DNA of 64,000 nucleotides, from IMG/VR virus record IMGVR_UViG_3300024520_000047, positions 1 to 64,000 of that record. The stretch is one strand, 5' to 3'. Below are positions 14,301 to 61,452 of this stretch, piece by piece. The position numbers and the translations under genes are program-made. Every line of letters begins with the position of its first letter. The stretch's first letter is position 1. The notes below the pieces were generated by a model that was not told the origin of the DNA, searched no databases, and saw nothing but the letters and a program-made list of their open reading frames with translations.

Positions 14301-14485
14301 TCTCTAGTAGGGAGGAGAGGTACCATTCCCTTCATGTGTTCCTTAAGGGTTGTTTTTGTTGGAGAATAGGTACGGTGGGGAAATAAGGGACCTATACTGT
14401 CTTCATATAAATGTAACTTTTTTCTTAAGTCAGTACCCATAAGACCTTGGTCTAATGCATCTTTTATTTCACTTAGTGTCGGCAT
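5366..14485 (-). CDS. giant acidic modular polyprotein P1 (3039 aa): 2 B-repeats, P-loop (CPT-like) kinase module, 9 A-repeats, other modules; LxE linkers
   Basis: Uninterrupted ORF; repeats and linkers visible in translation; IDGTSSAGKS Walker A at ~10380-10420. Confidence 0.9.
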   Translation of the reverse strand: MPTLSEIKDALDQGLMGTDLRKKLHLYEDSIGPLFPHRTYSPTKTTLKEHMKGMVPLLPTREPNSQSFRNSPEHNPEPNNRALEVPVETFIHYLDRHEKSEVEKFVKNHLEELESFYKGIAEEIAAGRIEDPDDYEEIYAHGSPYDGFDHELTQFDHRLTKLGLIDYRKEWNRDAVLLPVPYVLNEWLENIAQQYRPDAFVGFGGYVEIPEPQEPNLTDPTAFSLRKESTSLQEQVHEDDQWEEEDEGISYSPFTKKEIAILNFLAKNFTKEDLIQITTSTDLYPYSGNIGKRWKDAMKLFGHTMPEGWGEMEPKAEASKYAKWALDNWDEEIRGEDGEMDYSKVTKPIKVLPKWYNVNYEETVSQVEFKSGDVDLIAFDEDDALNKGNREFFDWGGNTDVDDYGDSERFEHETTSAEYKGLAEEIKKLIKEQPLTEQDRNKDSWTDEEAEGMDRSAFTPVESKILNTLKSTFTRNELSHISTNTFAYGGNQLAKRWVDLMKLFGIKTSPGTRGMEQRVDASKYAKWASDNWDFAEDLGDYSKIKAPFKELPKWYNVDYEETVDQTEYRRGSVEIMAFDEDDAYERGRDEFYDWNGEVDTYDYGEHEIIDSEISDVTYQGLAESTSSRRTDEEITQFLNDNYKDKFLKLYNLYTLGKEHGEKLVGGVSDASIKQFLKEVQFILYSNRRIPQWTGQSNVWDYTGDGYIPWDRSPFGRMSLHSTVIKWVQNLLLEDILSKEEHIKNAYEWLDTQFPTVVPNEYYPFGEGQFTDAIRSITHIAGLTWHEAQIVVDNFWREKRNAGKITASGKNDRLDEDKKRTLTKGLLEEEEHKKMLFNEDSDFPNINPAKSPNQLKKIYAHFKESLFNYWDNKGPHNDPHILKLLGLDTRKERGLYKIIDEWLVEWHGGREKAIEVAQEKLKGIQEVWDGGYDFKYVVTSIDEKELPWNVDQKKVRKERGWSVEDEIGVFVIVDGGGMANLALGGHDTYTLWDIFHDHQWWSDGDYEEECRTCGLRRSVRDESEDDLTRANRVSDEPDEALKEEVRQEIVEVLEENITDLLNATGIGVNYVTVKGATRPDHFPPKEYIHEAADMFGQGLLEPIELQPYDTEEEWEEDVAKIEIPDDDEETDYEDEYEYEGSETDPESGFVAPSRDVTENICNVKGFCKAQGPITFGQLKALVEAATNKRIASDIGRGVFKSLWRIIPFFLPQVLFAAVGITATRALNKIVTPALKDTKGYKRWWGKVVLKAMDIAEGDYIPDVALGDDPLSKIFFVSDGLLEMIRDKYKLKFARYVADVAAAQPDDEPVPDWFVENLLRDYLNQKFLLDPPLGPKHGVDIKKTLREQREQGLSDKSTILIDGTSSAGKSWVSKELKAVPFHKATDPNQWVIIASDDFNGYTPENEERRLAFDPPSIRDWAKGHDFGITSGLYRKAGEDVPPNPKENEYVGGPNANAAAWYMAQEFKTGKWNKVIFDDVTNDILKYVPNIKHNILLHAPIYMLINNIVGRNEVGKEDPDWREPTKALDQYLEKYEATKEKPDENKGDPSTELTKNGLKGLLSQSIDDENYIDGFISDLGIKDDGVYYIKVKDKYLTPNTQLINVDSDRIVYLDKFKEIVKTDTNKDIKKTLREQREEEVSPVLKSGDIIRPIDIPERKEQTPFGTPTPFALYWVWHPSYGTPKKEGDYIVITIEDLYKLQQSGYLEKFQDTPGLPGHLHRHLKVLSRDRDHQWLKVELSDEERAKYKDNAKRKLRGDVLQEQEEREISPPLEPGDMIKIIEKTDKDSYLNLWDEYVVLTPLWHDGSAEGWIVTGEGDKGWDKRQVYGYVVMRLDLLVDFNDANLHQDMIVNGHKWLKIGKYEPSIAHLQEERQKNPSPDLEEGDEIIVLHVDGTHENEPETFIPYKVIKRVREPRTKGKLSYHIEPMSGRFPYWDDEKERWEVENWDEKGKRKGLWTMTTKIIYEVGDEWIFRPGFKREEEEILNEESQPISRPTLKVGDVIKLIDNAASGEVLPYWTNRNEQIVDDDGYVLNDGELLELFVNYVVEDIVYNNEAPTGRKRIQGDPWKGEIKGDIWGYGISREERKRGRRQEWEKDGKEELKASGPYQWIIVNKEEEILQEQEEKVNPPIDVGDTVTVIAHEDPDVEYMTDDEIKEFMENQDLQDTLEGDWHNFEETAELMGYTRWPGKGWYHKKELNDQNPDLFVPYRIVQKVEIGWKEGDVMRYLLLTLPEVEEHEDEKREIWASGRVKGLDYRWLYPSEEKYIISPPTPKSLQEHQEKVNPYINVGDTITVVAYEDPDVEYMTDDEIKEFMENQEVKDTLQGDWHNYEETAELMGFKWHEGRGWYHRDDIETHTTQPDLFVPYRIIQKTPETEEHGRERAYGKRVEERGKRYLLLPLSEINKWKKSHKKGGYDFRWLYPNEVRYIMSPTPPSLQEQDSKKVEVNPPLKPGDKIKVIDVDEDSDQRREFMNGMQIITSERFPKLYHTYTVIDENEEMKWSTEGRGGGSPRYGWTRGYEGSGLDIDEGTQLLWLLMDKKDEDELLRYTEGRRVGYKVIAPYFDKWVKVEDPEVLQEHTKDKLNPQLMIGDEILVLQHNQPEGASFNPPEIYVPYVVVKIKESIKNNTFNDKYVHYEIERKELTPEEMQADLRAGGGWRRLTHLYPNDTWMLRPDSRGEELNEQSQDKVNPQLMIGDEIMVIESIGWRRKYTTGGRKPDLYEPYVVTAIKFRQPENWEGPDADLKYYEIEPIGLTDEDKRFGTAVNKWMGREKRIYPTDTWIYNPTFRREELNEQDFPFNRDNKKQELDHPKGEPPWSIRRGKQHYAMNVDPTPQEPVTALNNYLVKNSPFNFLGFDYYLSTVPGNMPGEARIDVYVPVLDDSVTADNIWKDILKFYKKKEEYDDWGNDIVGKLDDPYSMEEIPMRDIGYHAKWPDFYRYEEDFAELHPEAVEDYNRRDSDYINPDGKVYETSWRERFNTLKDEMKELAKLFGLENAVINRDPGHPWKRQQDSYGSQDIRPGTDIPYSWPRESDEIEWDEE
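6395..6736. repeat. 24-bp direct repeat at starts of A-repeats 8 and 9 (encodes QLMIGDEI)
   Basis: tatctcatctcctatcattaattg at 6395-6418 and 6713-6736. Confidence 0.85.
7380..8140. repeat. recent tandem duplication of A-repeats 5 and 6
   Basis: ~7480-7620 and ~7950-8090 near-identical; both encode EDPDVEYMTDDEIKEFMENQ...DTL.GDWHN.EETAELMG. Confidence 0.9.
9588..10475. repeat. perfect 30-bp direct repeat flanking the P-loop kinase module
   Basis: ctttgttcccgtaatgttttcttaatatct at 9588-9617 and 10446-10475; both lie in DIKKTLREQRE linkers. Confidence 0.95.
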
Positions 14486-15817: not shown

Positions 15818-17125
15818 TTAACACTCTCGACGCCTGGGGTTATATCTGTCGTCATTATATTGAGTTCCTCTATGGTCACTCCATACTAATTTTCCGTCTA
15901 TCCTAATCTCATCCCATTCTTCATCACCTAAATAATCAGTATCCGTCGTCTCTATATATTCCGTTTCTGGGTCATATTCCCACCAATTAGTCTCTGCGTC
16001 ACATATTGCAGATTGGAAATTGGTGTCCTCTATATTTATGGTACTTACTTTTAATACCGTATCCCGTTCAGTAAAAGTTCTACTAACCTGATAGTCAATA
16101 ATAGGTGGTAAGGTTTGACCAATATATTCTTCAAAGTGTGTAGGAATATTGTTATCCCAAATAAATTGGACATATTGTTTAGCTAAGTTCTCCGCCTCTA
16201 CACCTGAGATACCAAATAGTTTTAAAATTACATCTAACTCTAGTTCATCTGGGTGTAGGTGTAACATCTCCCTAATGCTATCGGGAGAATATTCTCTGAC
16301 AATTTGTCTCATTACTCGGGCATCTAACTCAGTGAGGGTGTTGTCTTTCCCTATTTTTTTATCCACCTCACTTTCCCTTAACAACTTTTGTTCCTCTGAC
16401 ATTTTGTCACTCTCCTGTAAAAAATGAATTTGTTTTTCAATCATTTTCTTTGCTACCTCCAAAGATTTAATCTCTGACAAGTTGACAGGTATGTTAAAGG
16501 GTCCCTTATGTAACGCAGGTTTTAATACAGTTTTCTTTAATTTATTTTTGTCAGGGGAATTGTAGGTTTCTTCTTCGTCTGGACTTCTATCAGATAAATG
16601 CACATTTCCAAATTTATGTACAAGGTCAAATCCATCACCCTTGAATAGGTCAGTGGTTCCTAGATTCTCAGAGCCCGCTAAACAAAAGTATTCACCATCT
16701 TCTGGGTCTTCACAAAAAGTACGGTCTTCGTTTTCATATATTTCTCTTCTGTCATACCCAAATTTCTTTACTAATTGTCCTGCGACTGCATTTGCTTCAT
16801 CTTCAATTTCTCCCCCAATGTCTTTGGGTAAATTATTTATATCAATTCGTCCATCCTCTAACTGTTTATGATGAACTAATTCATGTGCAATACTTCTTAA
16901 AATATCAGCTACAGCTCTATTTTTTCCGTATACTTTTACTGAATTGTCTTTTAAATTATAAGATGCTAGGGTAGTGAGGTCATTTCTATTGTCCACCACT
17001 TCACAATTGGTAGGCATAGAATATCCAAGTTCTTGTTTACAAAAGTCAACAAAATCTTGGACTACTTCGTCTCTATTAATATCTTTTAATTGTTCTTGAA
17101 TAATATTTTTAAGATTAATTTCCAT
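15818..17125 (-). CDS. HExxH zincin-like module + divergent B-repeat, LxE-delimited
   Basis: IAHELVHHKQ...EDEANA; linkers IIQEQ, IYENE, FLQES, LLRES. Confidence 0.75.
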   Translation of the reverse strand: MEINLKNIIQEQLKDINRDEVVQDFVDFCKQELGYSMPTNCEVVDNRNDLTTLASYNLKDNSVKVYGKNRAVADILRSIAHELVHHKQLEDGRIDINNLPKDIGGEIEDEANAVAGQLVKKFGYDRREIYENEDRTFCEDPEDGEYFCLAGSENLGTTDLFKGDGFDLVHKFGNVHLSDRSPDEEETYNSPDKNKLKKTVLKPALHKGPFNIPVNLSEIKSLEVAKKMIEKQIHFLQESDKMSEEQKLLRESEVDKKIGKDNTLTELDARVMRQIVREYSPDSIREMLHLHPDELELDVILKLFGISGVEAENLAKQYVQFIWDNNIPTHFEEYIGQTLPPIIDYQVSRTFTERDTVLKVSTINIEDTNFQSAICDAETNWWEYDPETEYIETTDTDYLGDEEWDEIRIDGKLVWSDHRGTQYNDDRYNPRRREC

Positions 17126-17129
17126 TATA

Positions 17130-17137
17130 TATAAATA
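17130..17137 (-). promoter_or_regulatory. TATTTAT motif (candidate phage late promoter), representative copy
   Basis: TATTTAT lies ~4-20 nt before starts at 17125, 27368, 27743, 42491, 48736, 49333, 50188, 50224, 54382, 55541, 56602, 58370; reverse complement of the T4 late TATAAATA. Confidence 0.5.
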
Positions 17138-19430: not shown

Positions 19431-20000
19431 ATGAATCCCAACCGTATAAAATCTATCCGCCGCACCTATATTATATTTTCTATAATAGTAGGAATTGTTG
19501 CTCCTATTTTATGCTATTGGTTAATTCCTCATTTTGACATAAAACACGACCCTTTATCTAAATTTGGTATCTCCGAACCCACTTCCCATATCTGGTTAGT
19601 CTCATTAATGTTTATTGCCATTGGATTATGGTTAAATGGGGAATATCGGATTGGGGAAATGATTAAGAAAAAAAAATGGCGTCCTTTATTGAAGTGGTTA
19701 CTGAGAATTTCTACTTTTTCATTATTATTAATGGCAGTAATAGATATGAGTTGGCACTGGACACATAAAACTTTAGCTTTACTTTTTTTCTGTGGATATA
19801 ATGTTTTTGTGTTTGCCTTTGGTATTGTGCGTTCTTTAACTTATGTTAGAAGAGGAATGTTTTCAGTAATAATGGCTACGCTTATGTTATCCACATCTTT
19901 ATTAATTCTTCCATTTCCAAGTTATGGTGTTGCTGAAATATCATATATATTTCTGATAGTGCTGTGGAACACTAAAGTCTTATTTAGGAAAAAATTATAA
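19431..20000 (+). CDS. polytopic membrane protein (DUF998-like)
   Basis: ~6 hydrophobic helices; PLSKFG and H..LALLFF motifs resemble DUF998. Confidence 0.6.
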   Translation: MNPNRIKSIRRTYIIFSIIVGIVAPILCYWLIPHFDIKHDPLSKFGISEPTSHIWLVSLMFIAIGLWLNGEYRIGEMIKKKKWRPLLKWLLRISTFSLLLMAVIDMSWHWTHKTLALLFFCGYNVFVFAFGIVRSLTYVRRGMFSVIMATLMLSTSLLILPFPSYGVAEISYIFLIVLWNTKVLFRKKL

Positions 20001-23000
20001 GGTTTCTTTCCATAAATTTATTAATCGGTTAGCAGTTGGTATTATGTTGCGTTTGGCTTCTCTAAGAGTTACTTCTTTATTTTTATTTTTAAGAGAATGG
20101 ATGGTGGTATCCCAGATAAGGTTTTTAATTTTATCACCATCTTCACTTAAGAGTCCACTATCCTTTTTTAATACAGTAGAATAGGTATCAATCCAGTCTT
20201 TTCCACCAATTAAAAAGTGGGAATAAAAATTCTCATTTGTCATCTCTTTATTTTTAACTTCACTTAAAAAATCAAAAATTAGTTTTCTTTTTTCAACTAG
20301 TTGGGCTGTGGTTACGTGTTGGGAACGTACTTTAATAAAAGCAGTTAAATCCATTTTATCAAACGACTCAAAGAACCTCCTTTTTATTAAAAAATCCTTT
20401 TGGGCTGCTTGTAAATGTCTGTTAACCTCTTCTGTCATATCTCCACGCAACTTTCCTCCCATTGTAAGGGTGTAGTCCGACTTTTTCTCAAAGTCTCTTA
20501 AATCGAAGATATTAATTGTATCTCCAATTTGAAATGGGATATTACTTAGGTTACCACTCTTTGCAATATCAACTATTTTCCCAGTTGGTGTCATATAAAG
20601 TAAAAAGGTCTGAGAGTTTTTACCCCAACCACCTTTGTATTCAAATCTTCCAATGATTAATAATCGTCTAATATAATTAGGAATGTTAGGTCTTTCTTCT
20701 TCTGGTAATTGTGGAATAATGGCTTCCGTTAACGGAGTGTTCCTGATGATAATCCATTTATCTCTCCCTCCTCCATCATCAGCATAATAATCATAGTCTT
20801 CTACTCCTTGATATAATCCCAAGTGTCCATCGTAAGTATCTATCTCGTATTTAATTCCTCCTCTAAACATATCACCTCTCGGTTCTTCGGATGCATTGCC
20901 TTCATATACATGTACCACGATTCCTACAGTAGTATTGGGTATCGTCAGTGTTGTAGTTCCGGGAGGTGCGGGGTCCATTTCTAAGTCCCAAATAAAAATT
21001 TTATCTCCTACTTTAAGTGGTGGACTTATTTCCTCTTTGGGTATTTTGGTGGTATCGATTTTTTGTTCCTTTAAAGTATTGAAATGATAGGCATCCGTAA
21101 TCTCCCAATCATCCGATTCATAATCTCCATGCTCATAGGTATGCATTTCTCCGCCCCACCCATAAAAATCTTCCCTCGATTTCTCTTCCGCATCCGTTGC
21201 TCCAAACGCGGTGACGTTTGCGCTACCCCTTTTAAATACTTGTTCCCAACCACTTTCTTCTGCCTCTACTTCATATTCGGAGGGGTATTCTTTTCTTGCA
21301 TTTTTAATTTGTCCATAATCTCCATCGTCTGCTTCGTGTCTATTCTCTAGTGCCCAGCGTGCATATTTGCTTATTATTGTCCAGATTTGAGCACTTCCCT
21401 CTCCACTGTTGGGTTCACCAAATAGTTTCATTACATCCTCATATCTAGAAGTAACTTGCCGTTGTATATCAGTTTTAAAAGTTCTGGTGGCAATTGCTTT
21501 TAATTCATCGAACGTAAATTCTCTAACAATAGTATTTAATATTTTAACTTCGAGTGCGGTAAAAGGACCATACTCTACATATAAGTCATCATCCTCTAAT
21601 CCACTCTCGGCATCTTGTTCGTTCAATCTTCTGGATGTAATATTCTTGCCACTAGCATCAATTTCTTTTTGTCGTGCCTCTATCTCTTGGGGTATATTGG
21701 ATACATGTTTTTTCACCATAATCCACTTATCGTTAGTCGTAAGGATTCTATTTCCCCTATCCCATTCAATATTTTCTCCTGTTATTGGTAACATGTTCCA
21801 ATACAAATTACGGAAGGTGGGTTCATTTCCAAAAGTTATTTGTTCTGTATTCACGGGTTCGGGAGAAGTAACATAATAAGTCTCCATGATAGTAGGAAAA
21901 GTATCTTCCCCATGTAATTCACCTCTACTTCGCGTTCTATACATGCCAGAACCTGCAGATTGTTTATATCTGGTATCTTTATCTACATCTACCACTCTAA
22001 TAACGTCTCCAATATTTAAAGATGGATTAAGTTTTTCTTTCTGTTCAGTAATCGGTTTTTTATGAACCTTAATCCATTGGTATATCCAAGGGTATAATAG
22101 TTTTGCGGTACCTCTACCTACCATATAGTCCCCATTTAAATAATCTTGATGTTTGTCTGCTGGAAGAAGTGTATATCTCCAAGGCCACTGTGCTTTGTGC
22201 CCAGCAGACTCTTTTTCTACTACTATGTATGGTGTTAATATCTCAGGTCTTTCCGCTTCTCCTCGCCCTTTCATCCTCTCCCTCTCCCTGTCTATATCTA
22301 TTACTCGTATACTATCACCCACTTCTAACTCTGGACTTAATTGGGTTTCTTTTTGTTCTCTTAAAATATATGGTGTGTCACCACCCCATATTTCTACTTC
22401 CTTGCCTACCCCTTTATCATTTCCTTCCCACTCGCCTGTCAGTGCAACCAATTCCATGTTGTCTATCCTCTCTATTATTTGACGTGCCCAAGCTTTTACA
22501 ACAGGGTTGGGGGTTAATCCTCTTAAACGATTATAAGATATGAAATCTCTTTCATCTGGTGGACCAATATTCGTAGTATCAATTAATCCTAATTTATATA
22601 AATCTTCATTGATGGTACCCCATAAATCATATAATTCCATTTGAGCCGTTTCAATTTTATCCGCCAAAAGGCCTATCTCACCTCTTCCTCCTTCTCCTCC
22701 ACCGAATCCACCGTATTTAAAATTTCTTACTCCACCTTCAGTATATGAGTCCTCATAACTGGTGAGTAAAAGTTTAGCTGCTAGAGCTAATTTCTTATAT
22801 ATTCTGAAAACCTCTTGTGTATAATTCTGGTGTAAAAACTTCTTTAGGGGTAAATTCTCACTCTGTTCTTTTATGGTTTCCCGATGTGTAGTACTTTCTA
22901 TCTCCCACCCATCAGATTCCCAATCTCCATAATCATAGGTCTCCATCTCACCACCCCAGTCGTACCAATCAGCTGTAGCCCTATCAGTCACATCCTGTGA

Positions 23001-53545: not shown

Positions 53546-54382
53546 TTATAAGGTGCTTAACATTTCCACCAATTTCGGTTGTGGTGATAAATCATATTTA
53601 TCTTTTCTCACATTAGTGTGTGTCCACACCCCCTCTGCACCAACTAAGGCTTGTTTATTAACTAAAAAGGCGTTACCATCACTATCTTCATTAAAAGAAT
53701 CTATAGCGTAATCAGTATTGCCACCAACTAGACCATCTTCTACTAATTTTTTTCCATTACTGCCTAAATAACCATGTAAATTTAACCATTGTTGTTTACC
53801 TAATGTATCTAAATTTATAGGTATCTTTAAAGATTTATTAATAATGCGTTTCATCCCTTTTGCTAAATCTATATCAAATTTTTCACCTAAACTTCTTATA
53901 AGTTGTTTAGTAGATTCTATTTGGGAGTCCGTATAAGTATGATAATAACGGTACCCTTTATATTCAAATCCTAAATCCACTACATCGGTGGAGGGTACCT
54001 TACTGTTAACATAATTGTAATAGGTGTCACCTTTCTTATGGAGAGGACCGTAATTACAAATCTCAATCCCAATACTTTCTTGATTTAATTTTTTATTGTT
54101 ACGAGCCTTTATGCCTAAATGGTGAGCCCATTTTTCAGGGGGGTGACATTCTACTACCACACCATCCCAATCAATATTACCGTCTCTGGTGGATTTACCA
54201 CCAATAATATAAGATGTAGCTATATGTCTTACACCACCCGATTTAGTTTTATCTCTGTCCCAACTCGCTACAGTCCAATCTGCACGATGACTACCAGCAG
54301 TGTGGTGAAGGTAAATTGTCTTTTTAGGTATGATGTCGTGATAGTACTCATCTTCTTCTAGGTAAATTTTTTTTAGTATCAT
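53546..54382 (-). CDS. N-acetylmuramoyl-L-alanine amidase (start moved to MILKK)
   Basis: YLHHTAG, SIGIEICN, YTDSQI, WTHTNVRKDKYDLSP; TATTTAT upstream of 54382. Confidence 0.88.
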   Translation of the reverse strand: MILKKIYLEEDEYYHDIIPKKTIYLHHTAGSHRADWTVASWDRDKTKSGGVRHIATSYIIGGKSTRDGNIDWDGVVVECHPPEKWAHHLGIKARNNKKLNQESIGIEICNYGPLHKKGDTYYNYVNSKVPSTDVVDLGFEYKGYRYYHTYTDSQIESTKQLIRSLGEKFDIDLAKGMKRIINKSLKIPINLDTLGKQQWLNLHGYLGSNGKKLVEDGLVGGNTDYAIDSFNEDSDGNAFLVNKQALVGAEGVWTHTNVRKDKYDLSPQPKLVEMLSTL

Positions 54383-54398
54383 GTTAATAGATTTTTCT

Positions 54399-55541
54399 TT
54401 ATAAATAGTCTTGAAGACGTTCATTAAATAGTTCAGTAACTTCATCATCATCGTGTGGGTATTCATCTACATTAGGACATAATGGAAAAGTAGAATCACT
54501 GTGTTTCATTATCTCAGCAAAATTACTATTGTCTATGTCACCGGTCTGGTCAATATATTGTAAGAGAGTACGTTCAGCGTGTGGGGTCACATCATAAAAA
54601 GACACTTTCACATCTATGGGTCTATATTTAGCCTCGCTTGAATTATATACGAATTTCTTTACTGTTCCCCTGCCCATAGATGTCCCCACATTCTCATAAA
54701 ACTCATCGTAATATGTGGTATAATAATTATCCATAATGCCTTGATTCCACGCATCTCCCCATGCCCACTTTATTTCATTTTTAACATCGTCTAATTCGTC
54801 TGCACTCTCCAATAGGACTGCGAGATTATATGGGTCTAGTCGTCTCACTCTCTCGGGATAAAGGAAAAAAGCATTATCATCTTCTCCAATCTGGTCTTCT
54901 TCTTTATAACCGTTGAATTCTTCTCTAAAGGTGCTTACCACTGCATTGGTATATTCATTCACCAAAAGATGTTTCAAGGCCTCTATGTTTTCCTCTGTCA
55001 TTTCATTTTCTAGAAGGTAGTCCAACTCGACATTAGTGTCATAGGGTTCCCAACTCAGTCCTTCCTCACCCCAAATCTCTTCCGCTACTGCATGACAATC
55101 TACATCATTACGGGTACTGTCATCATAAAAATCTGCTTCCTCACCGGGTTCCAAGCTCAGTATATATTTTCCATCTTTATAAGTGAGATTAGTTATTAGG
55201 TCTAGAGCCTCTGGTATTATGTACTTATGAAGTAAGTCTTTATCAGGATTATATGCCCCACCAATTGCATCTAAAACAACAGATAACGGATTCGCACTTT
55301 CATCCCAATGGGTTATAATATTAGTTAAAAATTTGTCACCAAGACCTTTATGTTCTAAAGCTTGATATAATTGTTGTAAGGAATTAAAATGGCCCTCTCC
55401 TCTATGACCCCATATATCTCCTCCTCCACCAAAGAGCTTTAAAAGGTCTGCTAAATCTTCCATGTCTTCCGAAGCCAAAGCAACTTCATACCATGGACGG
55501 CTATCTTCTACTAATATGGATAATTGGGTAATGAGTCTCAT
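54399..55541 (-). CDS. acidic protein with leader (MRLITQLSILVED)
   Basis: 380 aa, D/E/Y-rich; TATTTAT 5 nt upstream. Confidence 0.75.
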   Translation of the reverse strand: MRLITQLSILVEDSRPWYEVALASEDMEDLADLLKLFGGGGDIWGHRGEGHFNSLQQLYQALEHKGLGDKFLTNIITHWDESANPLSVVLDAIGGAYNPDKDLLHKYIIPEALDLITNLTYKDGKYILSLEPGEEADFYDDSTRNDVDCHAVAEEIWGEEGLSWEPYDTNVELDYLLENEMTEENIEALKHLLVNEYTNAVVSTFREEFNGYKEEDQIGEDDNAFFLYPERVRRLDPYNLAVLLESADELDDVKNEIKWAWGDAWNQGIMDNYYTTYYDEFYENVGTSMGRGTVKKFVYNSSEAKYRPIDVKVSFYDVTPHAERTLLQYIDQTGDIDNSNFAEIMKHSDSTFPLCPNVDEYPHDDDEVTELFNERLQDYL

Positions 55542-55554
55542 TCCCTATAAATAC

Positions 55555-55975: not shown

Positions 55976-56572
55976 TTAATTTTTAGAAACTTTTGTAATA
56001 ATATATGGATATGGGTCAATTTTTTTTTCACCCACACTTATCTCATAATGTAAATGTTGGCCTGTACTGGACCCAGTATTACCTACAGTTCCAATCGCTT
56101 GCCCATCACATATGGTGTCTTCTTCTTTTACAAATACCTTATTAAGGTGCGCATAAGTACTTTGGTATTCCCATCCATGATATATCTCAATGCACCTCCC
56201 ATATCCTCCACACCATCCTGAATGTAAAACTACACCATCCCCTGTCGCGTATACCGTATCTAAGTAAGTACCCTTTAAATCTATTCCTTGATGACGTTGC
56301 CATCGTTTACTGATGGGGTTACGCCTTACTCCAAAGGGGCTACTTACCTTTACACTATCAAGAGGTGCTCCCAAAGGAATAGCTTGTAATGGATTGGTAG
56401 ATTCAAATGTTTTTACATGGAGAGTATGAAGAAGAGAATCAATATATACTTCTTTATTCTTTATCTCTTTTTGATGCCTACTATTCACTACCCCAATAAT
56501 AATAATAGATAAAATTAAGAGAAGAAAAAAATAGACTATGATAAGTTTACAGTTCTCCATAACATACTTCAT
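55976..56572 (-). CDS. membrane-anchored M23 peptidase (start moved to MKYVMENC)
   Basis: TM helix; HQGID, YAHL, STGQHLHYE. Confidence 0.9.
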   Translation of the reverse strand: MKYVMENCKLIIVYFFLLLILSIIIIGVVNSRHQKEIKNKEVYIDSLLHTLHVKTFESTNPLQAIPLGAPLDSVKVSSPFGVRRNPISKRWQRHQGIDLKGTYLDTVYATGDGVVLHSGWCGGYGRCIEIYHGWEYQSTYAHLNKVFVKEEDTICDGQAIGTVGNTGSSTGQHLHYEISVGEKKIDPYPYIITKVSKN

Positions 56573-56601
56573 CTTATAAGTATTTATTGTAAAACTAATA
56601 G

Positions 56602-58368
56602 ATGCTCTTAACAGAAGACCGAGTCTCACAAATAAAAGAAAAGTACCAAATTTCTGCCGATATCTGGCCTGAATTAATCAGTGGTAGTCAAGCTATTGCT
56701 CCTAATCATAAATACTTGGGTTGGATGGCAAACCTTATCCAGAGAATGGGTGGAAGTGAGGTGGGGTTTTCTCACGGTGCTTTAATTACCATTCTGGAAG
56801 CAGTCTCCCAGTTTGAAAAATGGAAATCTCACCTTCCTCAAAAAGACCTTTATCAATATAAGAGCTTAGAAGAGGTAGAGGAAGCGTTGGAAAATTATAA
56901 AAAAGAAAAAACTAGAAATATAAAAACCCATGACGAATCCGAAGTCGTATATGAAGATGACCGCTTTAAAGTGGTAGTTCCAAGGTCTCATGATGCTTCG
57001 TGTTATTATGGTGCAGGTACCAAATGGTGTACTGCAACTAAGGGGAATGATAATCACTTTAGTTCCTATGATAAAGAAGGGAAATTATTTTATATTTTAG
57101 ATAAGCAGACCCCCACATCTAATCCCAATTATAAGGTAGCTCTTAATAAAACCTATAAAGGGGGTGAGTCATGGTGGAATGCGTTAGACAAATCTATGTT
57201 TCCTAGTGAGGTAGGACATATTGTTAATCACCCTAAGTTACTAAAAACTATAGAAGATTATTTTCAATTTACATATGCGGAAGATATCGCAAAAATAAGT
57301 GAAGAAGAAAAACAACAAGAATTAGAAAGAATAGCCCGAGAACAGGAGTGGGCCCAACGAAGAAGAGAAGCTCTTGCACGTGCTAATGCAAGTGCAGAAG
57401 AAAGAAGAGCGGGTGATGTGTGGAATCCAGAAGATACGGATAGTGAAGGAATGGCAGCCAATGCTCTCATGGAATGGTTAAAAGATAATGGAGACTGGAA
57501 CGAGGATAGTGAAGTGGAAGAGATAGAATCCCAAATCAGCGAGATGCGTCTCGAGATGGAAGACGACCCAGAAGTAATTGATGACCCTAGTGGGGAACGT
57601 GCCCAAGAATATGGTGAAGACCTCAATGACTTAGAAGAAGAGTTAGAATTGGCACGTATGGAGGTACACGACGTGTATAATATCTTTTTAGAACCCTATG
57701 ACCATTATGGTTTATATACTTTTGCATATGACGGAGCGGAATATGCGGTAGGAGATGATGATACTGCAGACGAGGCCGCATTCGAACAAGTTAAATCTTT
57801 AATAGATGACATAGGCATTGAGGGTTTCGGTGACTGGGTAATTGAAAATAATCTAGATGGTGATGATGTTGCGGATGAGTTTAGATATAGTCTTGAGGAT
57901 GATATACGGGATTCTCCTGAATCTTATCTGGATGAAGATTATGATAAGGTATTAAGTTATGAAGGCAAACAACACCAAAATAAACTAGAAGAACAAATAG
58001 CGGACCTACAGGACCAATTAAGCGATGAAGATATGAAGGAAGAATGGGAAGATATGGAAACTCTTATCGAAGACCTAGAAAATGAACTAGAGGACATAGA
58101 AGAGGATGAAGATTGGATGGAATGGGATGAAGAAAAAATGGATGAGTGGGTAGAAGGAAGACTACAAGAAATACGTGATAATCCTTTAGAGGAATTACAA
58201 CATTGGGGCTACGAAGGGGACCAAATCCTTAGATTTGTAGATGAAGATGGGGTAGCAAATGATGTGATAGAAGCGGATGGAAGAGGTAACGGGTTATCTG
58301 GTTATGATGGAGATGAAAATGAAGTACATTTTGACGACGAATGGTGGTATATTTATAGAATAAATTAA
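56602..58368 (+). CDS. acidic protein with CYYGAGTKWC module and leader MLLTE
   Basis: KDLYQYKS, YEDDRF.VV.PRSHDASCYYGAGTKWC; very acidic C-half. Confidence 0.8.
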   Translation: MLLTEDRVSQIKEKYQISADIWPELISGSQAIAPNHKYLGWMANLIQRMGGSEVGFSHGALITILEAVSQFEKWKSHLPQKDLYQYKSLEEVEEALENYKKEKTRNIKTHDESEVVYEDDRFKVVVPRSHDASCYYGAGTKWCTATKGNDNHFSSYDKEGKLFYILDKQTPTSNPNYKVALNKTYKGGESWWNALDKSMFPSEVGHIVNHPKLLKTIEDYFQFTYAEDIAKISEEEKQQELERIAREQEWAQRRREALARANASAEERRAGDVWNPEDTDSEGMAANALMEWLKDNGDWNEDSEVEEIESQISEMRLEMEDDPEVIDDPSGERAQEYGEDLNDLEEELELARMEVHDVYNIFLEPYDHYGLYTFAYDGAEYAVGDDDTADEAAFEQVKSLIDDIGIEGFGDWVIENNLDGDDVADEFRYSLEDDIRDSPESYLDEDYDKVLSYEGKQHQNKLEEQIADLQDQLSDEDMKEEWEDMETLIEDLENELEDIEEDEDWMEWDEEKMDEWVEGRLQEIRDNPLEELQHWGYEGDQILRFVDEDGVANDVIEADGRGNGLSGYDGDENEVHFDDEWWYIYRIN

Positions 58369-58369
58369 G

Positions 58370-58549
58370 ATGAAGATAACTTATAAAAAAGGAAAGTTGA
58401 TAATCCCCATTGAAGAGGGGGATACTATGTTGGTGGGGAGATTTAAAAATAAATCTGTTAAAGTTAAAAAGATTGAATTTGATGAAATTGGTCAGCCTCT
58501 GGTAAATGGCTCTCCTATTTTAAAATGTAAGTTACCAAAAACAATGTAA
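58370..58549 (+). CDS. small beta-rich protein (59 aa, absent from ORF track)
   Basis: MKITYKKGKLIIPIEEGDTMLVGRFKNKSVKVKKI...GQPLVNG. Confidence 0.7.
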   Translation: MKITYKKGKLIIPIEEGDTMLVGRFKNKSVKVKKIEFDEIGQPLVNGSPILKCKLPKTM

Positions 58550-58554: not shown

Positions 58555-61452
58555 ATGGAAAAGATTTTAATTGAAAGTGGCATACGAGATATAAATAAAT
58601 TAGCTGAAAGGTACCCTAAAGCTGAGATTTATTTTCATCAAGATTTAGATGGTGTTGTCTCTGCAATTGCCATGAAAGAATATCTGGAAAAGTATGGTAT
58701 TGATGTTATTGATACTCATGTGATACAATATGGTGATAAAGAATTTTCAGTTCAAAAACCCAAAGCAACGGGAGACGTAATGCCTGTATTAGTAGATTTT
58801 GCACACGGTAAACCCATTTTTACTATCCATACTGACCATCACGACACTCAAATAGGTGTGGAAGACGATACCTCTACCCAATTTAGAGGTGCGCGTTCTA
58901 ACGTGGAAACTATTTCTCAAATAGTTAGTCCTCAAGATATTTTTCCCACAGATGACATCACGATGATTTCTACGGTGGATAGTGCAGATTACGCAAAACA
59001 TGGTCTCACTCCTGATGACGTAATGAATTACATTTATAAATTTGAGAAGGACGGTTCTTTACCAGACAATAAGTGGTTGTTGGGGTTATTAACCAATAAA
59101 CTTCTTTTAGCATATAAAAATAAACCTGACTTTCTGGAAGAACTGGTTAGGTCTTCATCACCATCCCTACTTAATATCTTTCAAAATATTAACCGTATTG
59201 GGGGAGAGAGAGATTTTGCCACACCAGAACAAATGAATATCAATCAACAACGTTATGTAAAATCCCAAGAAGAAAGTGAAAATTTATATTTAGATGGGGA
59301 AATTATAGTACAGTATGGTGGTGGTAAATTATTTAAACCCGGTTCATATGACCGTTATACACCATTCAAAATATATCCAGAAGCAGATTTTTTAATAATA
59401 GCATGGCCGTTGGGGTTAGTTCAAGCGTCTTGTAATCCTTTTAAAGAAGAACGTGCACTAAAAGGGATAAATCTTGGGGATATCGCACAAGAAGTATTAT
59501 TAGAATTTAAAGAGGAATTAGAAAACTATATTGTTCCCTTTTCGGTATTAAAAAGAATTAGTGAAGCTAAGGTAAATGAAGAAAGTATTGGATTTAAATA
59601 TACAGATTTAGAAGCTTTATATGGTGATAAAATTATTAATATGCCACCACCTGAAAGTGGGTTTGGTAAAATGGTTAGAAGTATTTTAAATATTCAATGG
59701 CCTAAATTAAGTGAGAAACAAAAAGCAATATTAGACAAATTAGGTGTTAGTGCGTGGGATGTGATTATCTCAAATTCTGGAGGACATAAATGTATTACTA
59801 ATATTTCAGGTTTAAATTTCTATAAAAGAGGAAAACGTGACCCCCAAAGAAGAACATATGGTGGAAATAATGGAGATACACCATATGTAGATTTAATAAA
59901 AAGAATTCAAGCGGCTTTTGTTAAAAAATTAAAAGAAAAAATTAATAGTGGGTCATCATTACAAGAAACCTATCTCGTAGAAGCGATGGTGGATGATTTA
60001 ATCCAAAAATACCCCACTGAAGAAAATATTATTCAAACCTTAAATGATGAATCTCAAAATATTGCAGGGTCTAACAAATATCTACCGTGGATGGTCAAAC
60101 AATGGATGGATGCTCACGCTGATGAGCGTGCAGAAGATGTCTTGGAAGAGATTATTAACGCCACCAGTTCTTTTCATCAAGCCCTACCTAGAATAAATAG
60201 AGAAAGTGTAACAGAACTAATTGGGGTTAATGACTTCCCTAGTGTGAGTACCTACACCCGAATTGTTAATTCACCTAAAGATATCCATTCCTACCCTAAC
60301 GCGGAGATACTGCGAGATATATCCATGCAAATATTAAGTGAACTCTCACGGGGAGATAAAGAAAAGTTTGCAAAGAGTGGAGCCGAAAAATTATACGAAG
60401 ACGATAGATGGTTTTTAGTTAAACCTAAAACTCAAGAAGCCTCCTGTTATTATGGTGCAGGCACTCAGTGGTGTACTTCTGCAACCAAAAGTAATGCGTT
60501 TGGTCACTATAATAAAAATGGTAATTTATATTATCTAATTGATAAAAGTAGGCAGTTAGGTCCATATTATAAACTTGCTATCTATAGAAGTTATAATGGT
60601 AATACTGATAGTATCCATACTGAACGAGATAGGGCTCTCTCTCTAGAACAAACAGACCTCCTACGTAATATTCTTCCTCCACAAATATTTGCTTTAATTA
60701 AGGAGGATATGACTGTTCCAGCTCCACCACCCCAATATTATGAACTACCGGAATTTACAAAAAAATTAACTGACTATGTAGCAACTCTCACTCGTCCTCG
60801 TCAATTTGGTTCGGATAGTGGTACGTGGACTTTAAGAATAGAAGATGAGTATGGTTGGGTTCTGGAGAGTAAAGAATCAGGCATCATTCTACAAGCTAAC
60901 CCATTCTTTGAGGGTCAGTATTATATTCCTGTAGATAGTTGGGAGATTGAAGAAAAACTTAATAAGGCTTGGCATATGGAGGTTGGCTCTCCACCGCTTC
61001 CTCCTTATGGAGACTTTAGGGAAAGCTATATGGAAATGGAAGATGATGAAAATTTATTTAACCGTAAATTAGGGTGGGTACTCAATCTCTATCAACGGAT
61101 TATGCAACACCAAGTATTAAATGATGAGACTATAAAGAAAGTAGTGGGGATAGATTTTACCACATGGTCAGCTAATAGATGGCAAAATACAATGACATTT
61201 AAATATCCCCCTAAAGAGGGGTCTCTTACCCAACGATTTGTAGATTTTGTTAAAAAGAATCCGGGTAAAACTAGAAAAGAATTCTATGACTCTATCGGTA
61301 GGGAATACGCTCCTGGTCATAATAGTAGTTTCTTTGCTGCTATAAAAGATGCTGGAATTGTAGAGTTAACACGTAAGGGAAGACAATTTGTCTATACTAT
61401 TGGCCCTAACCATCAGGCATGGATTGACGGAAGATTAAAATTAATTAAATAA
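58555..61452 (+). CDS. DHH phosphoesterase + CYYGAGTQWC module + C-terminal winged-helix-like domain, LxE-delimited
   Basis: HQDLDG, VDF, TDHH; linker SLQETYLVEA; leader MEKILIE. Confidence 0.85.
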   Translation: MEKILIESGIRDINKLAERYPKAEIYFHQDLDGVVSAIAMKEYLEKYGIDVIDTHVIQYGDKEFSVQKPKATGDVMPVLVDFAHGKPIFTIHTDHHDTQIGVEDDTSTQFRGARSNVETISQIVSPQDIFPTDDITMISTVDSADYAKHGLTPDDVMNYIYKFEKDGSLPDNKWLLGLLTNKLLLAYKNKPDFLEELVRSSSPSLLNIFQNINRIGGERDFATPEQMNINQQRYVKSQEESENLYLDGEIIVQYGGGKLFKPGSYDRYTPFKIYPEADFLIIAWPLGLVQASCNPFKEERALKGINLGDIAQEVLLEFKEELENYIVPFSVLKRISEAKVNEESIGFKYTDLEALYGDKIINMPPPESGFGKMVRSILNIQWPKLSEKQKAILDKLGVSAWDVIISNSGGHKCITNISGLNFYKRGKRDPQRRTYGGNNGDTPYVDLIKRIQAAFVKKLKEKINSGSSLQETYLVEAMVDDLIQKYPTEENIIQTLNDESQNIAGSNKYLPWMVKQWMDAHADERAEDVLEEIINATSSFHQALPRINRESVTELIGVNDFPSVSTYTRIVNSPKDIHSYPNAEILRDISMQILSELSRGDKEKFAKSGAEKLYEDDRWFLVKPKTQEASCYYGAGTQWCTSATKSNAFGHYNKNGNLYYLIDKSRQLGPYYKLAIYRSYNGNTDSIHTERDRALSLEQTDLLRNILPPQIFALIKEDMTVPAPPPQYYELPEFTKKLTDYVATLTRPRQFGSDSGTWTLRIEDEYGWVLESKESGIILQANPFFEGQYYIPVDSWEIEEKLNKAWHMEVGSPPLPPYGDFRESYMEMEDDENLFNRKLGWVLNLYQRIMQHQVLNDETIKKVVGIDFTTWSANRWQNTMTFKYPPKEGSLTQRFVDFVKKNPGKTRKEFYDSIGREYAPGHNSSFFAAIKDAGIVELTRKGRQFVYTIGPNHQAWIDGRLKLIK

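What the first reader, a model, noticed from the sequence alone, without database searches (positions are those of the whole stretch)
14485..58580. Shared N-terminal leader ending in [L/I/V]xE plus upstream TATTTAT marks a probable head-targeted gene set
Seen: leaders MPTLSE (14485), MKILITE..ILLNEE (15807), MEINLKNIIQEQ (17125), MRQSPNILQES (27368), MKLMDQLSYLIED (48736), MKLLKHLSNIISE (49333), MTTQSYLINE (50224), MRLITQLSILVED (55541), MLLTED (56602), MEKILIES (58555). Seven of these have TATTTAT 4-14 nt upstream; the other three lie downstream in coupled runs. Accessory genes under TAnnTTTG promoters lack such leaders. Known: T4 internal proteins use a ~10-aa capsid-targeting sequence (MKTYQEFIAE) removed at IAE. 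Inference: a late promoter plus capsid-targeting leader defines a programmable packaging address. TATTTAT is frequent in AT-rich DNA, so enrichment needs testing.
Basis: partly seen in the sequence, partly recalled or inferred. Interest (0 to 1): 0.75.

Follow-up and report, generated by a model that had tools for sequence, protein, structure and literature searches.

The report
T4-style capsid-targeting leaders, marine jumbo phage
An uncultured marine jumbo phage with a T4-type head protease carries short N-terminal leaders ending hydrophobic-[L/I]-x-Glu on a set of enzyme-rich proteins. They are most likely T4-like tags that load these proteins into the capsid and are then cut off, whereas the TATTTAT motif is a general phage promoter, not a head-specific mark.

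Summary

**TATTTAT is a real promoter-like signal, but not head-specific.**
- It is the most enriched 7-mer before genes: 50 of 249 ORFs against 10.0±3.0 in shuffles.
- It sits mostly 4-5 nt or 13-18 nt before the ATG.
- It precedes head and tail genes, but also a DnaB helicase, a glutaredoxin-like gene and a DruA-like gene.

[L/I/V]xE in the first 14 residues occurs in 54 of 249 proteins, about the 19% background.

**A stricter T4-derived motif, hydrophobic-[L/I]-x-E, is enriched.**
- It occurs in 6 of 16 genes with TATTTAT 4-5 nt upstream against 22 of 233 others (Fisher 0.004; background 4.1%).
- It recovers six known gp21 substrates among 63 T4 proteins.

**The genome has a T4-type head module:** Gp23 capsid protein, Portal_T4, and a Peptidase_S77 protease that keeps the catalytic His and Ser.

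**Relatives treat the leaders as a separate module.** They are kept through synonymous changes, swapped on one protein body, shared by different proteins, and T4-like (MISKYNQFINE) in 634-642 kb phages.

Verdict: a probable T4-type capsid-targeting and cleavage system with polyvalent, enzyme-rich cargo. Cleavage and packaging are untested, and the 2457-aa giant is equivocal.

The parts
15818..17125 (-). 435-aa protein. Leader MEINLKNIIQE|Q, followed from residue ~17 by a widespread HExxH (AHELVHH...EDEANA) zincin-like domain.
   Evidence: The five nearest homologues keep [I/L]xE at positions 9-12, while many others start directly at the domain. In homologues the domain is fused to M23, SLT, Zeta/AAA_33 kinase, PAP2, Acb1, NUDIX and other domains.
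17131..17137 (-). TATTTAT, 5 nt before the ATG of the operon 17125>15818>14485>5366.
14485..15807 (-). 440-aa Peptidase_M23 + PG_binding_1 + Phage_lysozyme2 protein. Leader MKILITE|KQLNRILLNE|E.
   Evidence: In the relative L025 the same 18-23-residue leader also heads a different 307-aa protein, where PG_binding starts at residue 28.
5366..14485 (-). 3039-aa giant protein. MPTLSE|I is a weak leader (loose motif only). Translationally coupled to the gene before it.
   Evidence: Shares repeated domains with the 2457-aa giant. The orthologue in L025 starts MATLVE|I, so L-x-E is kept while P2 changes. No family hit.
19995..27368 (-). 2457-aa giant protein with a weak HD/HDIG domain hit. Leader MRQSPNILQE|S.
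   Evidence: Homologues carry PPK2, PG_binding or DUF192 domains, and two of the three at 48-49% identity lack the motif: equivocal.
27374..27380 (-). TATTTAT, 5 nt before the ATG at 27368.
42219..42491 (-). 90-aa glutaredoxin/thioredoxin-like ORF (CPWC) with TATTTAT 5 nt upstream and no leader. A counter-example to 'TATTTAT marks head cargo'.
48725..49317 (+). TATTTAT (48725-48731) followed by a 193-aa Phage_lysozyme protein (48736-49317). Leader MKLMDQLSYLIE|D.
   Evidence: Its leader resembles that of 54399-55541 without any body homology.
49321..49860 (+). TATTTAT (49321-49327) followed by a 175-aa protein (49333-49860). Leader MKLLKHLSNIISE|Y, then one transmembrane-like segment (residues 25-43).
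   Evidence: The orthologue in L017 starts MKLLHQLNTIINE|S, with L, I and E kept through synonymous codon changes.
49850..50199 (-). 112-aa DUF192 protein (49850-50188) with TATTTAT 4 nt upstream (50193-50199) and no leader.
50212..52431 (+). TATTTAT (50212-50218) followed by a 735-aa protein (50224-52431). Leader MTTQSYLINE|T. Contains an HELEH motif.
   Evidence: Orthologues start MTTKTQLIKE|T and MKTKSHLIKE|T, with synonymous changes. The ending resembles HLINE60|A of the capsid protein.
53546..54466 (-). 306-aa Amidase_2-like peptidoglycan amidase ORF. It overlaps the end of 54399-55541 and has no leader.
54399..55553 (-). 380-aa protein (54399-55541) with leader MRLITQLSILVE|D, and TATTTAT at 55547-55553.
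   Evidence: The leader is nearly invariant in 12 homologues down to 59% identity. The promoter and the first 8 codons are invariant at DNA level.
55976..56572 (-). 198-aa M23 peptidase with an N-terminal membrane anchor (no leader).
56581..58368 (+). TATTTAT (56581-56587), 14 nt before a 588-aa protein (56602-58368) that starts MLLTE|D.
   Evidence: Shares a domain with 58555-61452 and with genome 66844-68169. The N-terminus is kept in four relatives.
58350..58549 (+). TATTTAT (58350-58356) followed by a 59-aa ORF (58370-58549), which precedes the coupled gene at 58555.
58555..61452 (+). 965-aa protein. Leader MEKILIE|S, then a DHH/DHHA1 phosphoesterase domain (~13-420), then a variable C-terminal part.
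   Evidence: More than 1000 homologues at about 60-92% identity carry swapped C-termini: SET, M23+PG_binding, GH19. Most of the 120 listed start MK..[ILV][IL]xE|[ST]G. E7 is invariant and the DHH motifs are intact. Residues 1-11 are disordered in the model. All top PDB matches are DHH-family enzymes.

Best explanation
The window is the first 64 kb of a 246-kb record, estimated 77% complete, of an uncultured marine jumbo phage. Its promoters are of the Bacteroidota type and its head module is of the T4 type.

Promoter. TATTTAT, preceded by a non-T base, usually followed by A or T, and with no -35 partner, is a phage-specific promoter element for about 50-57 genes. One of the phage's own sigma factors probably reads it. 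At 16 genes it lies 4-5 nt before the ATG, so these transcripts should start at or next to the start codon (leaderless mRNA). This step is inferred.

Leaders. A subset of these genes, and genes coupled behind them, encode proteins whose first 5-18 residues end in hydrophobic-[L/I]-x-Glu. By homology with T4, I propose that these leaders dock the proteins onto the scaffolding core of the prohead. The gp21-family protease then cuts after the Glu, leaving the mature protein inside the capsid to be ejected with the DNA.

Cargo. It is enzyme-rich and polymorphic:
- an M23/lysozyme peptidoglycan hydrolase;
- a lysozyme;
- two HExxH proteins;
- a DHH phosphoesterase fusion;
- a small protein with one transmembrane segment;
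- possibly the two giant proteins.

Shown: the motifs, their enrichment, the protease with its catalytic residues, and leader conservation and exchange in relatives. Inferred: the transcription start, targeting, cleavage and ejection.
For: Head module. Gp23 capsid protein (1e-74), Peptidase_S77 (3.5e-23) and Portal_T4 (8e-80) are present. The gene order is portal, small proteins, protease, acidic 560-aa protein, capsid protein, as in T4 genes 20-67/68-21-22-23. The equivalents of T4 His85 and Ser140 are conserved.

Other proteins of the module carry matching sites.
- The protease has GILIE16|Y near its N-terminus, as T4 gp21 has LLIE9.
- The capsid protein has HLINE60|ATT.
- Loose [L/I]xE sites are densest, of 249 proteins, in the scaffold-position protein (rank 1) and in the protein at the gp67/68 position (rank 3).

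T4 control. T4 sites read from its own DNA are FIAE, LLRE, LIAE, LLIE, LIPE and FLTE65. In 63 T4 CDS the strict motif flags 9, of which 6 are known gp21 substrates and one is the head protein Inh.

Enrichment here. 6 of 16 against 22 of 233, Fisher 0.004, background 4.1%.

Leader as a module.
- The 380-aa family keeps MRLITQLSILLED down to 59% identity.
- The 175-aa and 735-aa families keep L, I and E through synonymous changes.
- The DHH family has an invariant Glu7 and leaders of variable length or swapped: MEKILIE, MKLLRE, MKNKRILKE.
- Homologues at 37-38% identity in 634-642 kb phages start MISKYNQFINE and MLRKYGQFINE, close to T4 MKTYQEFIAE. Those phages have weak Peptidase_S77 matches.
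- One 18-23-residue leader heads two different proteins in L025.
- Many homologues of the 435-aa protein start directly at the domain, without a leader.
- Leader residues are disordered in the structure model.

Promoter.

Literature. The T4 capsid-targeting sequence is 10-19 residues; residues 4 and 7 target and residues 8 and 10 direct processing (PMC9026906). T-even internal proteins are diverse and share only that sequence (PMC3012670). Polyvalent proteins are predicted capsid cargo (PMC5512222).
Against: - No proteomic, N-terminal or transcript evidence exists. The phage is uncultured, and metatranscriptome contigs did not cover the region.
- The loose motif is at background. The strict motif was fixed after seeing the data and also hits the large terminase, which is probably a false positive.
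- Ten of the 16 genes with TATTTAT 4-5 nt upstream have no leader.
- The 2457-aa giant's motif is missing in two of its three closest (48-49%-identical) homologues, and MPTLSE of the 3039-aa giant fits only the loose form.
- In the alignment with T4 gp23, the T4 cut (FLTE65) falls opposite GSFET, 11-12 residues after LINE60. The capsid protein's own site is therefore not fixed by homology.
- Residues after the predicted cut (D, Y, Q, E, S, T) differ from T4's A, S and T.
- No gp22, gp55 or gp45 homologue was found by single-sequence search in this incomplete record.
- The lysozyme could simply be an endolysin.
Confidence: 0.6

Rival explanations
1. Mostly chance. TATTTAT is a real promoter, but the 'leaders' are ordinary N-termini of an AT-rich, Leu/Ile/Glu/Lys-rich proteome. 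Only a few proteins (48736, 49333, 55541) share an N-terminal helix, for some unrelated reason such as oligomerisation.
For: [L/I/V]xE within 14 residues occurs in 54 of 249 proteins, equal to the 19% background. The strict motif is also found on the large terminase and on small early ORFs. The giant's motif is not conserved. Ten of the 16 genes with TATTTAT 4-5 nt upstream lack a leader.
Against: The strict motif is enriched nine-fold over background in the 4-5 nt class. The T4 control shows the motif is informative. Glu7 is invariant across the aligned homologues, with leaders that are swapped or vary in length. Synonymous changes preserve L, I and E. The same leader heads two different proteins. 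T4-like leaders occur in distant huge phages.
Confidence: 0.15
2. The leaders are real gp21-type propeptides, but they do not target the head interior. They could keep hydrolases and peptidases inactive until assembly, or mark proteins for another virion site (tail or baseplate-associated lysins). The peptidoglycan hydrolases would then act from the tail tip, and the lysozyme from within at lysis.
For: The cargo is dominated by peptidoglycan hydrolases, which in many phages are tail-associated. PHROG hits include tape-measure and endolysin families. In T4, processing and targeting determinants are separable (PMC9026906).
Against: A gp21-type protease acts inside the prohead, so its substrates must be there. 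Non-lytic cargo (DHH phosphoesterase, HExxH proteins, a transmembrane protein like SPN3US gp47) fits ejection proteins. Separate membrane-anchored hydrolases (48292-48711, 55976-56572) are better endolysin candidates.
Confidence: 0.15
3. The conserved 5' coding sequence is an RNA-level requirement of leaderless mRNAs (ribosome loading on a 5' AUG), or a recombination handle for cassette exchange, rather than a peptide signal.
For: In the 380-aa family, TATTTATAGGGA plus the first 8 codons are identical at DNA level even in a 59%-identical relative. Relatives carry different cassettes at the same places.
Against: In the 175-aa, 735-aa and DHH families the amino acids are kept while the codons change. 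Leaders on coupled genes without a promoter of their own (14485, 15807, 58555) cannot be leaderless-mRNA signals. The three similar leaders in this genome use different codons.
Confidence: 0.1

Closest known systems
Phage T4 capsid-targeting sequences of internal proteins IPI-III, Alt and gp24, cut by the prohead protease gp21
   Same: The protease is of the same family (Peptidase_S77, catalytic His and Ser kept), with a Gp23 capsid protein and a T4 portal in the same gene order. The leaders are short (5-18 residues), often start MK, and end hydrophobic-[L/I]-x-Glu. Diverse, exchangeable cargo sits behind a conserved leader, as in the T-even internal-protein loci (PMC3012670, PMC9026906).
   Different: - The leader sequences differ here (M[KR]L..QLS.[LI][IV].E, MK.[IL][IL].E).
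- The residues after the cut differ.
- The cargo is not small basic proteins. It is peptidoglycan hydrolases, HExxH proteins, a DHH phosphoesterase fusion and possibly 2457- and 3039-aa giants.
- The promoter is TATTTAT instead of TATAAATA and often abuts the ATG.
- The host is probably Bacteroidota.
- Nothing has been tested biochemically.
Processed ejection and inner-body proteins of phiKZ, 201phi2-1 and SPN3US
   Same: These are jumbo phages with diverged gp21-like proteases that cut after Glu. They have many head-internal ejection proteins, conserved N-termini among diverged paralogues, and one ejection protein with a transmembrane segment after its propeptide (PMC5694885).
   Different: Their motif is [S/A/G]-x-E or A-x-E, and their propeptides are mostly longer than 100 residues. 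Here the motif and the lengths are T4-like.
Polyvalent proteins (Iyer, Burroughs, Anand, de Souza and Aravind 2017)
   Same: Large multi-domain, enzyme-rich proteins of phages, predicted to be packaged and injected. A zincin-like HExxH module is combined with many effector domains.
   Different: That work defines them by domain architecture and context, not by an N-terminal address. The families here gave no Pfam match to its named domains.
T4 late promoters (TATAAATA, gp55/gp33/gp45)
   Same: A single AT-rich -10-type element without a -35 element, standing before head and tail genes.
   Different: The sequence is different (TATTTAT[A/T]). It also precedes a helicase and other non-virion genes. 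No gp55 or gp45 homologue was found by direct search. The only candidates are a sigma-70-family gene (79688-80482) and a weak region-2-only protein (202805-203479).

Membership tests
T4-type capsid-targeting sequence / gp21 propeptide system | The genome encodes a gp21-family (Peptidase_S77) prohead protease with catalytic His and Ser. | tested here: met
   PF03420 3.5e-23, phrog_207 1.5e-43. H90 and S153 align with T4 H85 and S140.
T4-type capsid-targeting sequence / gp21 propeptide system | T4-type head shell and portal (Gp23, Portal_T4) in T4 gene order, with a scaffold between protease and capsid protein. | tested here: inconclusive
   Gp23 1e-74 and Portal_T4 8e-80, and the order matches T4. 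The 560-aa acidic protein in the gp22 position has no detectable homology; it is only richest in [L/I]xE sites.
T4-type capsid-targeting sequence / gp21 propeptide system | N-terminal propeptide of about 10-19 residues ending [L/I]-x-Glu on otherwise unrelated proteins. | tested here: met
   Met for 15807, 17125, 48736, 49333, 50224, 55541, 56602 and 58555. The bodies are unrelated. The leaders are conserved or swapped in relatives. Weak for 14485, equivocal for 27368.
T4-type capsid-targeting sequence / gp21 propeptide system | The propeptide is removed after the Glu during head maturation. | not testable with these tools
   The phage is uncultured and no proteome is available.
T4-type capsid-targeting sequence / gp21 propeptide system | The leader is necessary and sufficient for incorporation into the prohead. 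| not testable with these tools
   Needs a reporter-fusion experiment.
T4-type late promoter system (gp55/gp33/gp45) | A single -10-type AT-rich element without a -35 element, before late genes. | tested here: met
   TATTTAT with no upstream conserved positions, before the protease, terminase, scaffold-capsid operon, sheath and adaptor genes.
T4-type late promoter system (gp55/gp33/gp45) | The consensus is TATAAATA and the element is restricted to late genes. | tested here: not met
   The consensus is TATTTAT[A/T]. It also precedes a DnaB-like helicase, a glutaredoxin-like gene, and DruA-like and kinase-like genes.
T4-type late promoter system (gp55/gp33/gp45) | gp55 and gp45 homologues are encoded. 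| tested here: inconclusive
   Direct searches found nothing, but the record is 77% complete and the queries were single sequences. The protein at 202805-203479 has a weak Sigma70_r2 hit (8e-4) and a weak gp55 similarity (E 0.016).
DHH/DHHA1 phosphoesterases (N-terminal domain of 58555-61452) | DHH motifs (DxD, D, DHH, D) and a GGGH-type DHHA1 motif; DHH fold. | tested here: met
   H28, D30, D32, D81, H84, D94-H95-H96-D97 and D142-D145 are invariant in 28 sequences. All significant PDB matches are RecJ, NrnA, PggH, GdpP or DhhP, though TM-scores are low, 0.14-0.37. The Pfam DHH hit is below cut-off.
Polyvalent proteins | Several unrelated enzymatic domains in one polypeptide, in a phage, within a virion or late-gene context. 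| tested here: inconclusive
   Homologue families combine an HExxH module or the DHH domain with M23, SLT, GH19, SET, kinase, Acb1, NUDIX, PPK2 and other domains. In this genome's own giants only a weak HD hit was found.

The most novel reading that the evidence does not exclude
The T4 capsid-targeting sequence is an ancient, sequence-readable address shared by all phages with a gp21-family protease, from T4 to marine Bacteroidota jumbo phages and 630-kb huge phages (MISKYNQFINE against MKTYQEFIAE). In this marine lineage it loads a polymorphic arsenal into the capsid for delivery with the DNA: DHH phosphoesterase fused to interchangeable peptidoglycan hydrolase or SET domains, HExxH polyvalent modules, and 2.5-3-thousand-residue giants. 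Capsid cargo of uncultured phages could then be predicted from sequence alone.
Probability: 0.35. Interest if true: 0.7.

Novelty: new member of a known kind. Interest (0 to 1): 0.5.

Why it matters
Proteins that phages inject with their DNA decide the first minutes of infection: counter-defence, host takeover and cell-wall passage. They are almost impossible to recognise in uncultured phages. If the hydrophobic-[L/I]-x-Glu leader is a reliable mark wherever a gp21-family protease is present, it gives a simple sequence rule for listing capsid cargo in metagenomic jumbo phages. Here that rule points to an abundant marine family (more than 1000 homologues) of DHH phosphoesterase carriers with swappable enzymatic ends. 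It would also extend T4's leader-based protein-packaging principle to Bacteroidota phages.

Tried and rejected
- Near-identical DNA search in the phage collection: no match.
- Related loci for the 380-aa, 735-aa and 440-aa proteins in viral contigs: none.
- RNA evidence: metatranscriptome runs hold only up to 14% of the capsid-gene words, and nothing useful lay on 48600-54599. There is therefore no transcription-start evidence.
- T4 gp55 and gp45 searched directly in the genome: nothing, which is inconclusive.
- PHROG, Pfam and NCBIfam scans on the two giants and on the 380-, 735-, 175- and 588-aa proteins: essentially nothing.
- Profile search of the DHH alignment against PDB sequences: none; the fold search was needed.
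- Names for the NCBI-sourced homologues: none given, so no cultured relative with a virion proteome could be found.
- Tape-measure reading of the 3039-aa protein: set aside. It shares repeated globular-type domains with the 2457-aa giant and lies away from the tail genes at 84-184 kb. It was not excluded.
- SAR-endolysin reading of the lysozyme leader: rejected, because it has no hydrophobic segment.
Full report
**What the window is.** The window is the first 64 kb of a single 245,874-bp record with 33% G+C. It is classed as a linear virus record, about 77% complete. The same sequence lies on a 293,317-bp metagenome contig. It is found in seawater metagenomes only and has no close relative among 50,697 deposited phage genomes.

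Outside the window it carries a T4-type head module:
- a Gp23 capsid protein (209848-211644, PF07068 1e-74);
- a Peptidase_S77 prohead protease (213471-214181, PF03420 3.5e-23);
- a Portal_T4 portal (215749-217557, 8e-80);
- a large terminase.

The gene order is portal, small proteins, protease, a 560-aa acidic protein, capsid protein, which mirrors T4 genes 20-67/68-21-22-23. The protease aligns with T4 gp21 at 34% identity and keeps T4's His85 and Ser140 (H90, S153). The nearest capsid proteins in the phage collection are about 41% identical: uncultured huge phages, a Microcystis phage, Flavobacterium phage immuto and Rhodothermus RM378. TAnnTTTG, the Bacteroidota -7 promoter element (my own knowledge), lies exactly 4 nt before the ATG of 8 genes. 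The genome also encodes a ribosomal protein bS21 homologue.

**The observation.** The genes at 14485 and 15807 follow 17125 in one coupled run. The gene at 58555 follows 56602 and a 59-aa ORF.

**TATTTAT.** Genome-wide the word is not over-represented: 207 sites against 218-244 expected from Markov models. Its placement is far from random, however.
- It is the most enriched of all 7-mers in the 40 nt before my 249 ORFs: 50 genes against 3.6 expected from genome frequency, and against 10.0±3.0 (maximum 18) in dinucleotide shuffles of the same upstream regions. The antisense count is 20.
- The base before it is rarely T, the base after it is A or T, and nothing is conserved further upstream. It is therefore a lone -10-type element, like a T4 late promoter in architecture but not in sequence. 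T4 TATAAATA is seen before genes 22 and 24.
- The distance to the ATG is bimodal: 4-5 nt (16 genes) and 13-18 nt.
- With 5 nt of spacing, a start about 6 nt after the element would fall on the A of the ATG. This is inferred from the usual spacing of such elements. The same geometry applies to TAnnTTTG at 4 nt. I therefore infer leaderless mRNAs for both classes; no read data could test this.
- The element precedes the protease, the terminase, the scaffold-capsid operon, the sheath and a head-tail adaptor. It also precedes a DnaB-like helicase, a glutaredoxin-like ORF, a DruA-like protein and a Zeta/AAA_33-like kinase.
- It is therefore a phage promoter class (middle or late), not a mark of head cargo.
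- Candidate readers are a sigma-70-family protein (79688-80482, regions 2 and 4) and a 224-aa protein next to the baseplate genes. The latter has only a weak region-2 hit and a weak similarity to T4 gp55. Direct searches for gp55 and gp45 found nothing in this incomplete record.

**The leader: chance or not.**
- As written, [L/I/V]xE near the N-terminus is no finding. It occurs in 54 of 249 proteins within the first 14 residues, against 19% of internal 14-residue windows. It is not significantly linked to TATTTAT.
- I then used the form that T4's own sites show. Reading T4 from its DNA gives IPII/IPIII MKTYQEFIAE|A, gp24 MAKINELLRE|S, gp22 MLKEQLIAE|A, gp21 MNEPQLLIE|T, gp68 MLLIPE|T and gp23 ...GSFLTE65|AEIGG. 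The common form is hydrophobic-[L/I]-x-Glu.
- As a control, this strict motif within 14 residues flags 9 of 63 annotated T4 proteins. Six are known gp21 substrates and one is the head protein Inh.
- In the present genome its internal background is 4.1%. It is found at 28 of 249 N-termini, and at 6 of the 16 genes with TATTTAT 4-5 nt upstream against 22 of 233 others (Fisher 0.004).
- The motif was fixed after I had seen the data, so this p-value is soft. The large terminase is among the hits, which shows that false positives occur.

**Independent support from relatives.**
1. The 380-aa protein (55541) has 12 metagenomic homologues down to 59% identity. In them M1, L3-S8, L10 and E12 are invariant, against a mean column identity of 64%.
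2. In the 175-aa and 735-aa families the Leu, Ile and Glu of the leader are kept through synonymous codon changes: TTA/CTG, CTT/TTA, ATT/ATC, GAA/GAG, CTA/CTC. The peptide is therefore translated and under selection. The three similar leaders inside this genome (48736, 49333, 55541) also use different codons and have unrelated bodies.
3. The N-terminal 420 residues of the 965-aa protein (58555) form a DHH/DHHA1 phosphoesterase.
   - All DHH motifs are invariant, and every significant PDB match belongs to the RecJ/NrnA/PggH/GdpP family.
   - More than 1000 marine homologues, about 60-92% identical among the 120 best, carry interchangeable C-terminal ends: SET, M23+PG_binding, GH19.
   - Most of the 120 listed begin MK[KRT][ILV][IL]xE|[ST]G[IL][RQ]. 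N-terminal extensions vary in length, but the Glu is invariant.
   - One relative carries the same body behind a different leader, MKLLRE against MEKILIE.
   - In the structure model, residues 1-11 are disordered and the fold starts at about residue 13.
4. Homologues of that domain at 37-38% identity, in two uncultured phages of 634 and 642 kb, start MISKYNQFINE|EVG and MLRKYGQFINE|EVG. This is strikingly close to T4's MKTYQEFIAE. Both genomes have weak Peptidase_S77 matches.
5. The 435-aa protein (17125) carries an HExxH zincin-like domain from residue ~17, with 1463 relatives. Many relatives start directly at the domain, while its five nearest homologues keep [I/L]xE at positions 9-12.
6. 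In a 91%-identical relative, the leader MKILITEKQL.RILLNEE heads two adjacent proteins with different architectures: leader-PG_binding-X, and leader-M23-PG_binding-lysozyme.
7. Relatives carry different cassettes at the same positions, again with such leaders: MKNRGDSKLITE, MNYTSDILTE and MTERHDILTE. This recalls the T-even internal-protein loci (PMC3012670).

**Weak points.**
- The 2457-aa giant's NILQE is absent from two of its three closest (48-49%-identical) homologues. Other homologues have a motif at other positions, or none.
- MPTLSE of the 3039-aa giant fits only the loose form, although its orthologue keeps L-x-E (MATLVE).
- In the capsid protein the site resembling the leaders (HLINE60|ATT) lies 11-12 residues before the position aligned with T4's cut.
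- Loose [L/I]xE sites are densest in the scaffold-position protein and in the gp67/68-position protein (ranks 1 and 3 of 249). The p-values are only about 1e-3, and the first of these proteins is very acidic.

**What the cargo is.** The region is rich in peptidoglycan hydrolases:
- M23 + PG_binding + Phage_lysozyme2 (15807);
- lysozyme (48736);
- Amidase_2 (53546-54466);
- a membrane-anchored M23 peptidase (55976-56572);
- a signal-anchored glucosaminidase-like ORF (48292-48711).

The membrane-anchored ones lack leaders and are the better endolysin candidates.

The remaining leader-bearing proteins are:
- two HExxH proteins (17125, 50224);
- the DHH fusion;
- a 175-aa protein with one transmembrane segment after its leader, which recalls SPN3US gp47 (PMC5694885);
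- the 380-aa and 588-aa proteins of unknown function.

Homologue families combine these modules with kinases, PAP2, Acb1, NUDIX, SLT, PPK2 and others. That is the pattern described for polyvalent proteins, which are predicted to be packaged and injected (PMC5512222). The two giants share repeated domains.

**Mechanism proposed.**
1. A phage sigma factor reads TATTTAT.
2. Many of the resulting transcripts begin at the AUG.
3. The leader-bearing products bind the scaffolding core through their N-terminal 5-18 residues.
4. The gp21-family protease cuts after the Glu.
5. The mature enzymes stay in the head and leave with the DNA.

Steps 1-2 rest on motif statistics and geometry. Steps 3-5 rest on homology with T4 (PMC9026906, PMC3012670) and on the comparative behaviour of the leaders. 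None has been observed directly.

**Verdict.**
- Its promoter is real but general.
- Its leader criterion is too loose, but a core set of about eight proteins very probably carries T4-type targeting and cleavage leaders.
- This is a new member of a known kind of system, with unusual cargo, and it suggests a useful rule for reading capsid cargo from sequence.

Noticed in passing
window 65-78, 207-220, 445-458, 621-634, 821-834, 18104-18117, 32681-32694, 33024-33037, 34265-34278, 34689-34702 (all minus strand): An exact 14-nt word, AAACCAAAACAAAG, occurs ten times. Nine copies directly abut the ATG of a small early-type ORF, mostly in coupled runs. It looks like a conserved translation-initiation or coupling element for a host that lacks Shine-Dalgarno use.
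   Followed up: partly
window 52428-52619 (-): A 63-aa ORF whose orthologues in relatives hit Ribosomal_S21 (PF01165). It has a TAnnTTTG element upstream: a phage-encoded bS21.
   Followed up: no
genome 68546-69712 (-) = L001:4593-5759: A 388-aa protein matches the Druantia defence protein DruA (PF14236, 3.4e-26), inside a phage genome and under TATTTAT 5 nt upstream. It is conserved in relative L015, but without the motif there.
   Followed up: no
window 58555-61452 and homologues P0014-P0133: The DHH/DHHA1 carrier domain is very abundant in marine metagenomes: more than 1000 proteins, about 60-92% identical among the 120 best. Its C-terminal ends are interchangeable (SET, M23+PG_binding_1, GH19 chitinase-like, PF01085-like), so this is a polymorphic fusion family.
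   Followed up: partly
window 5366-14485 and 19995-27368: The two giant proteins share several repeated domains at 33-40% identity over about 200 residues. Examples are residues 194-635 of the first against 1304-1509 and 1877-2088 of the second. Homologues of the second carry PPK2, PG_binding or DUF192 domains.
   Followed up: partly
genome 234010-234855, 237189-238133, 238136-238435 (L010): Three neighbouring proteins share another N-terminal motif: [FL]TESEL[IV]..IE or LSETELISII. It also contains [L/I/V]xE sites and resembles MKILITEKQL.RILLNEE of 15807. It may be a second leader type.
   Followed up: no
genome 79688-80482 (L001:15735-16529) and 202805-203479 (L008:11586-12260): A full sigma-70-family factor (regions 2 and 4), and a 224-aa protein with only a weak region-2 hit and a weak similarity to T4 gp55. 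The latter lies just before baseplate-like genes.
   Followed up: partly
window 42778-43854 (-); genome 225736-227601 and 69884-70849: Host-like genes in the phage: a 358-aa glutamine-synthetase-like protein (Gln-synt domains in the orthologue), a DnaK-like N-terminus, and a DnaJ homologue.
   Followed up: no
L024 / contig Ga0255048_10000001: The window's sequence also sits on a 293,317-bp metagenome contig, where window 14485-15807 maps at about 39-42 kb. The 245,874-bp record is therefore truncated, and genes such as gp55 or gp45 may lie in the missing part.
   Followed up: no
window 54399-55553 and L011, L015, L017, L018: In the 380-aa family the stretch TATTTATAGGGA plus the first eight codons is identical at DNA level in all relatives. 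Yet the sequence just upstream is diverged, and the proteins fall to 59% identity. This is unexplained nucleotide-level constraint, or a recombination handle.
   Followed up: partly
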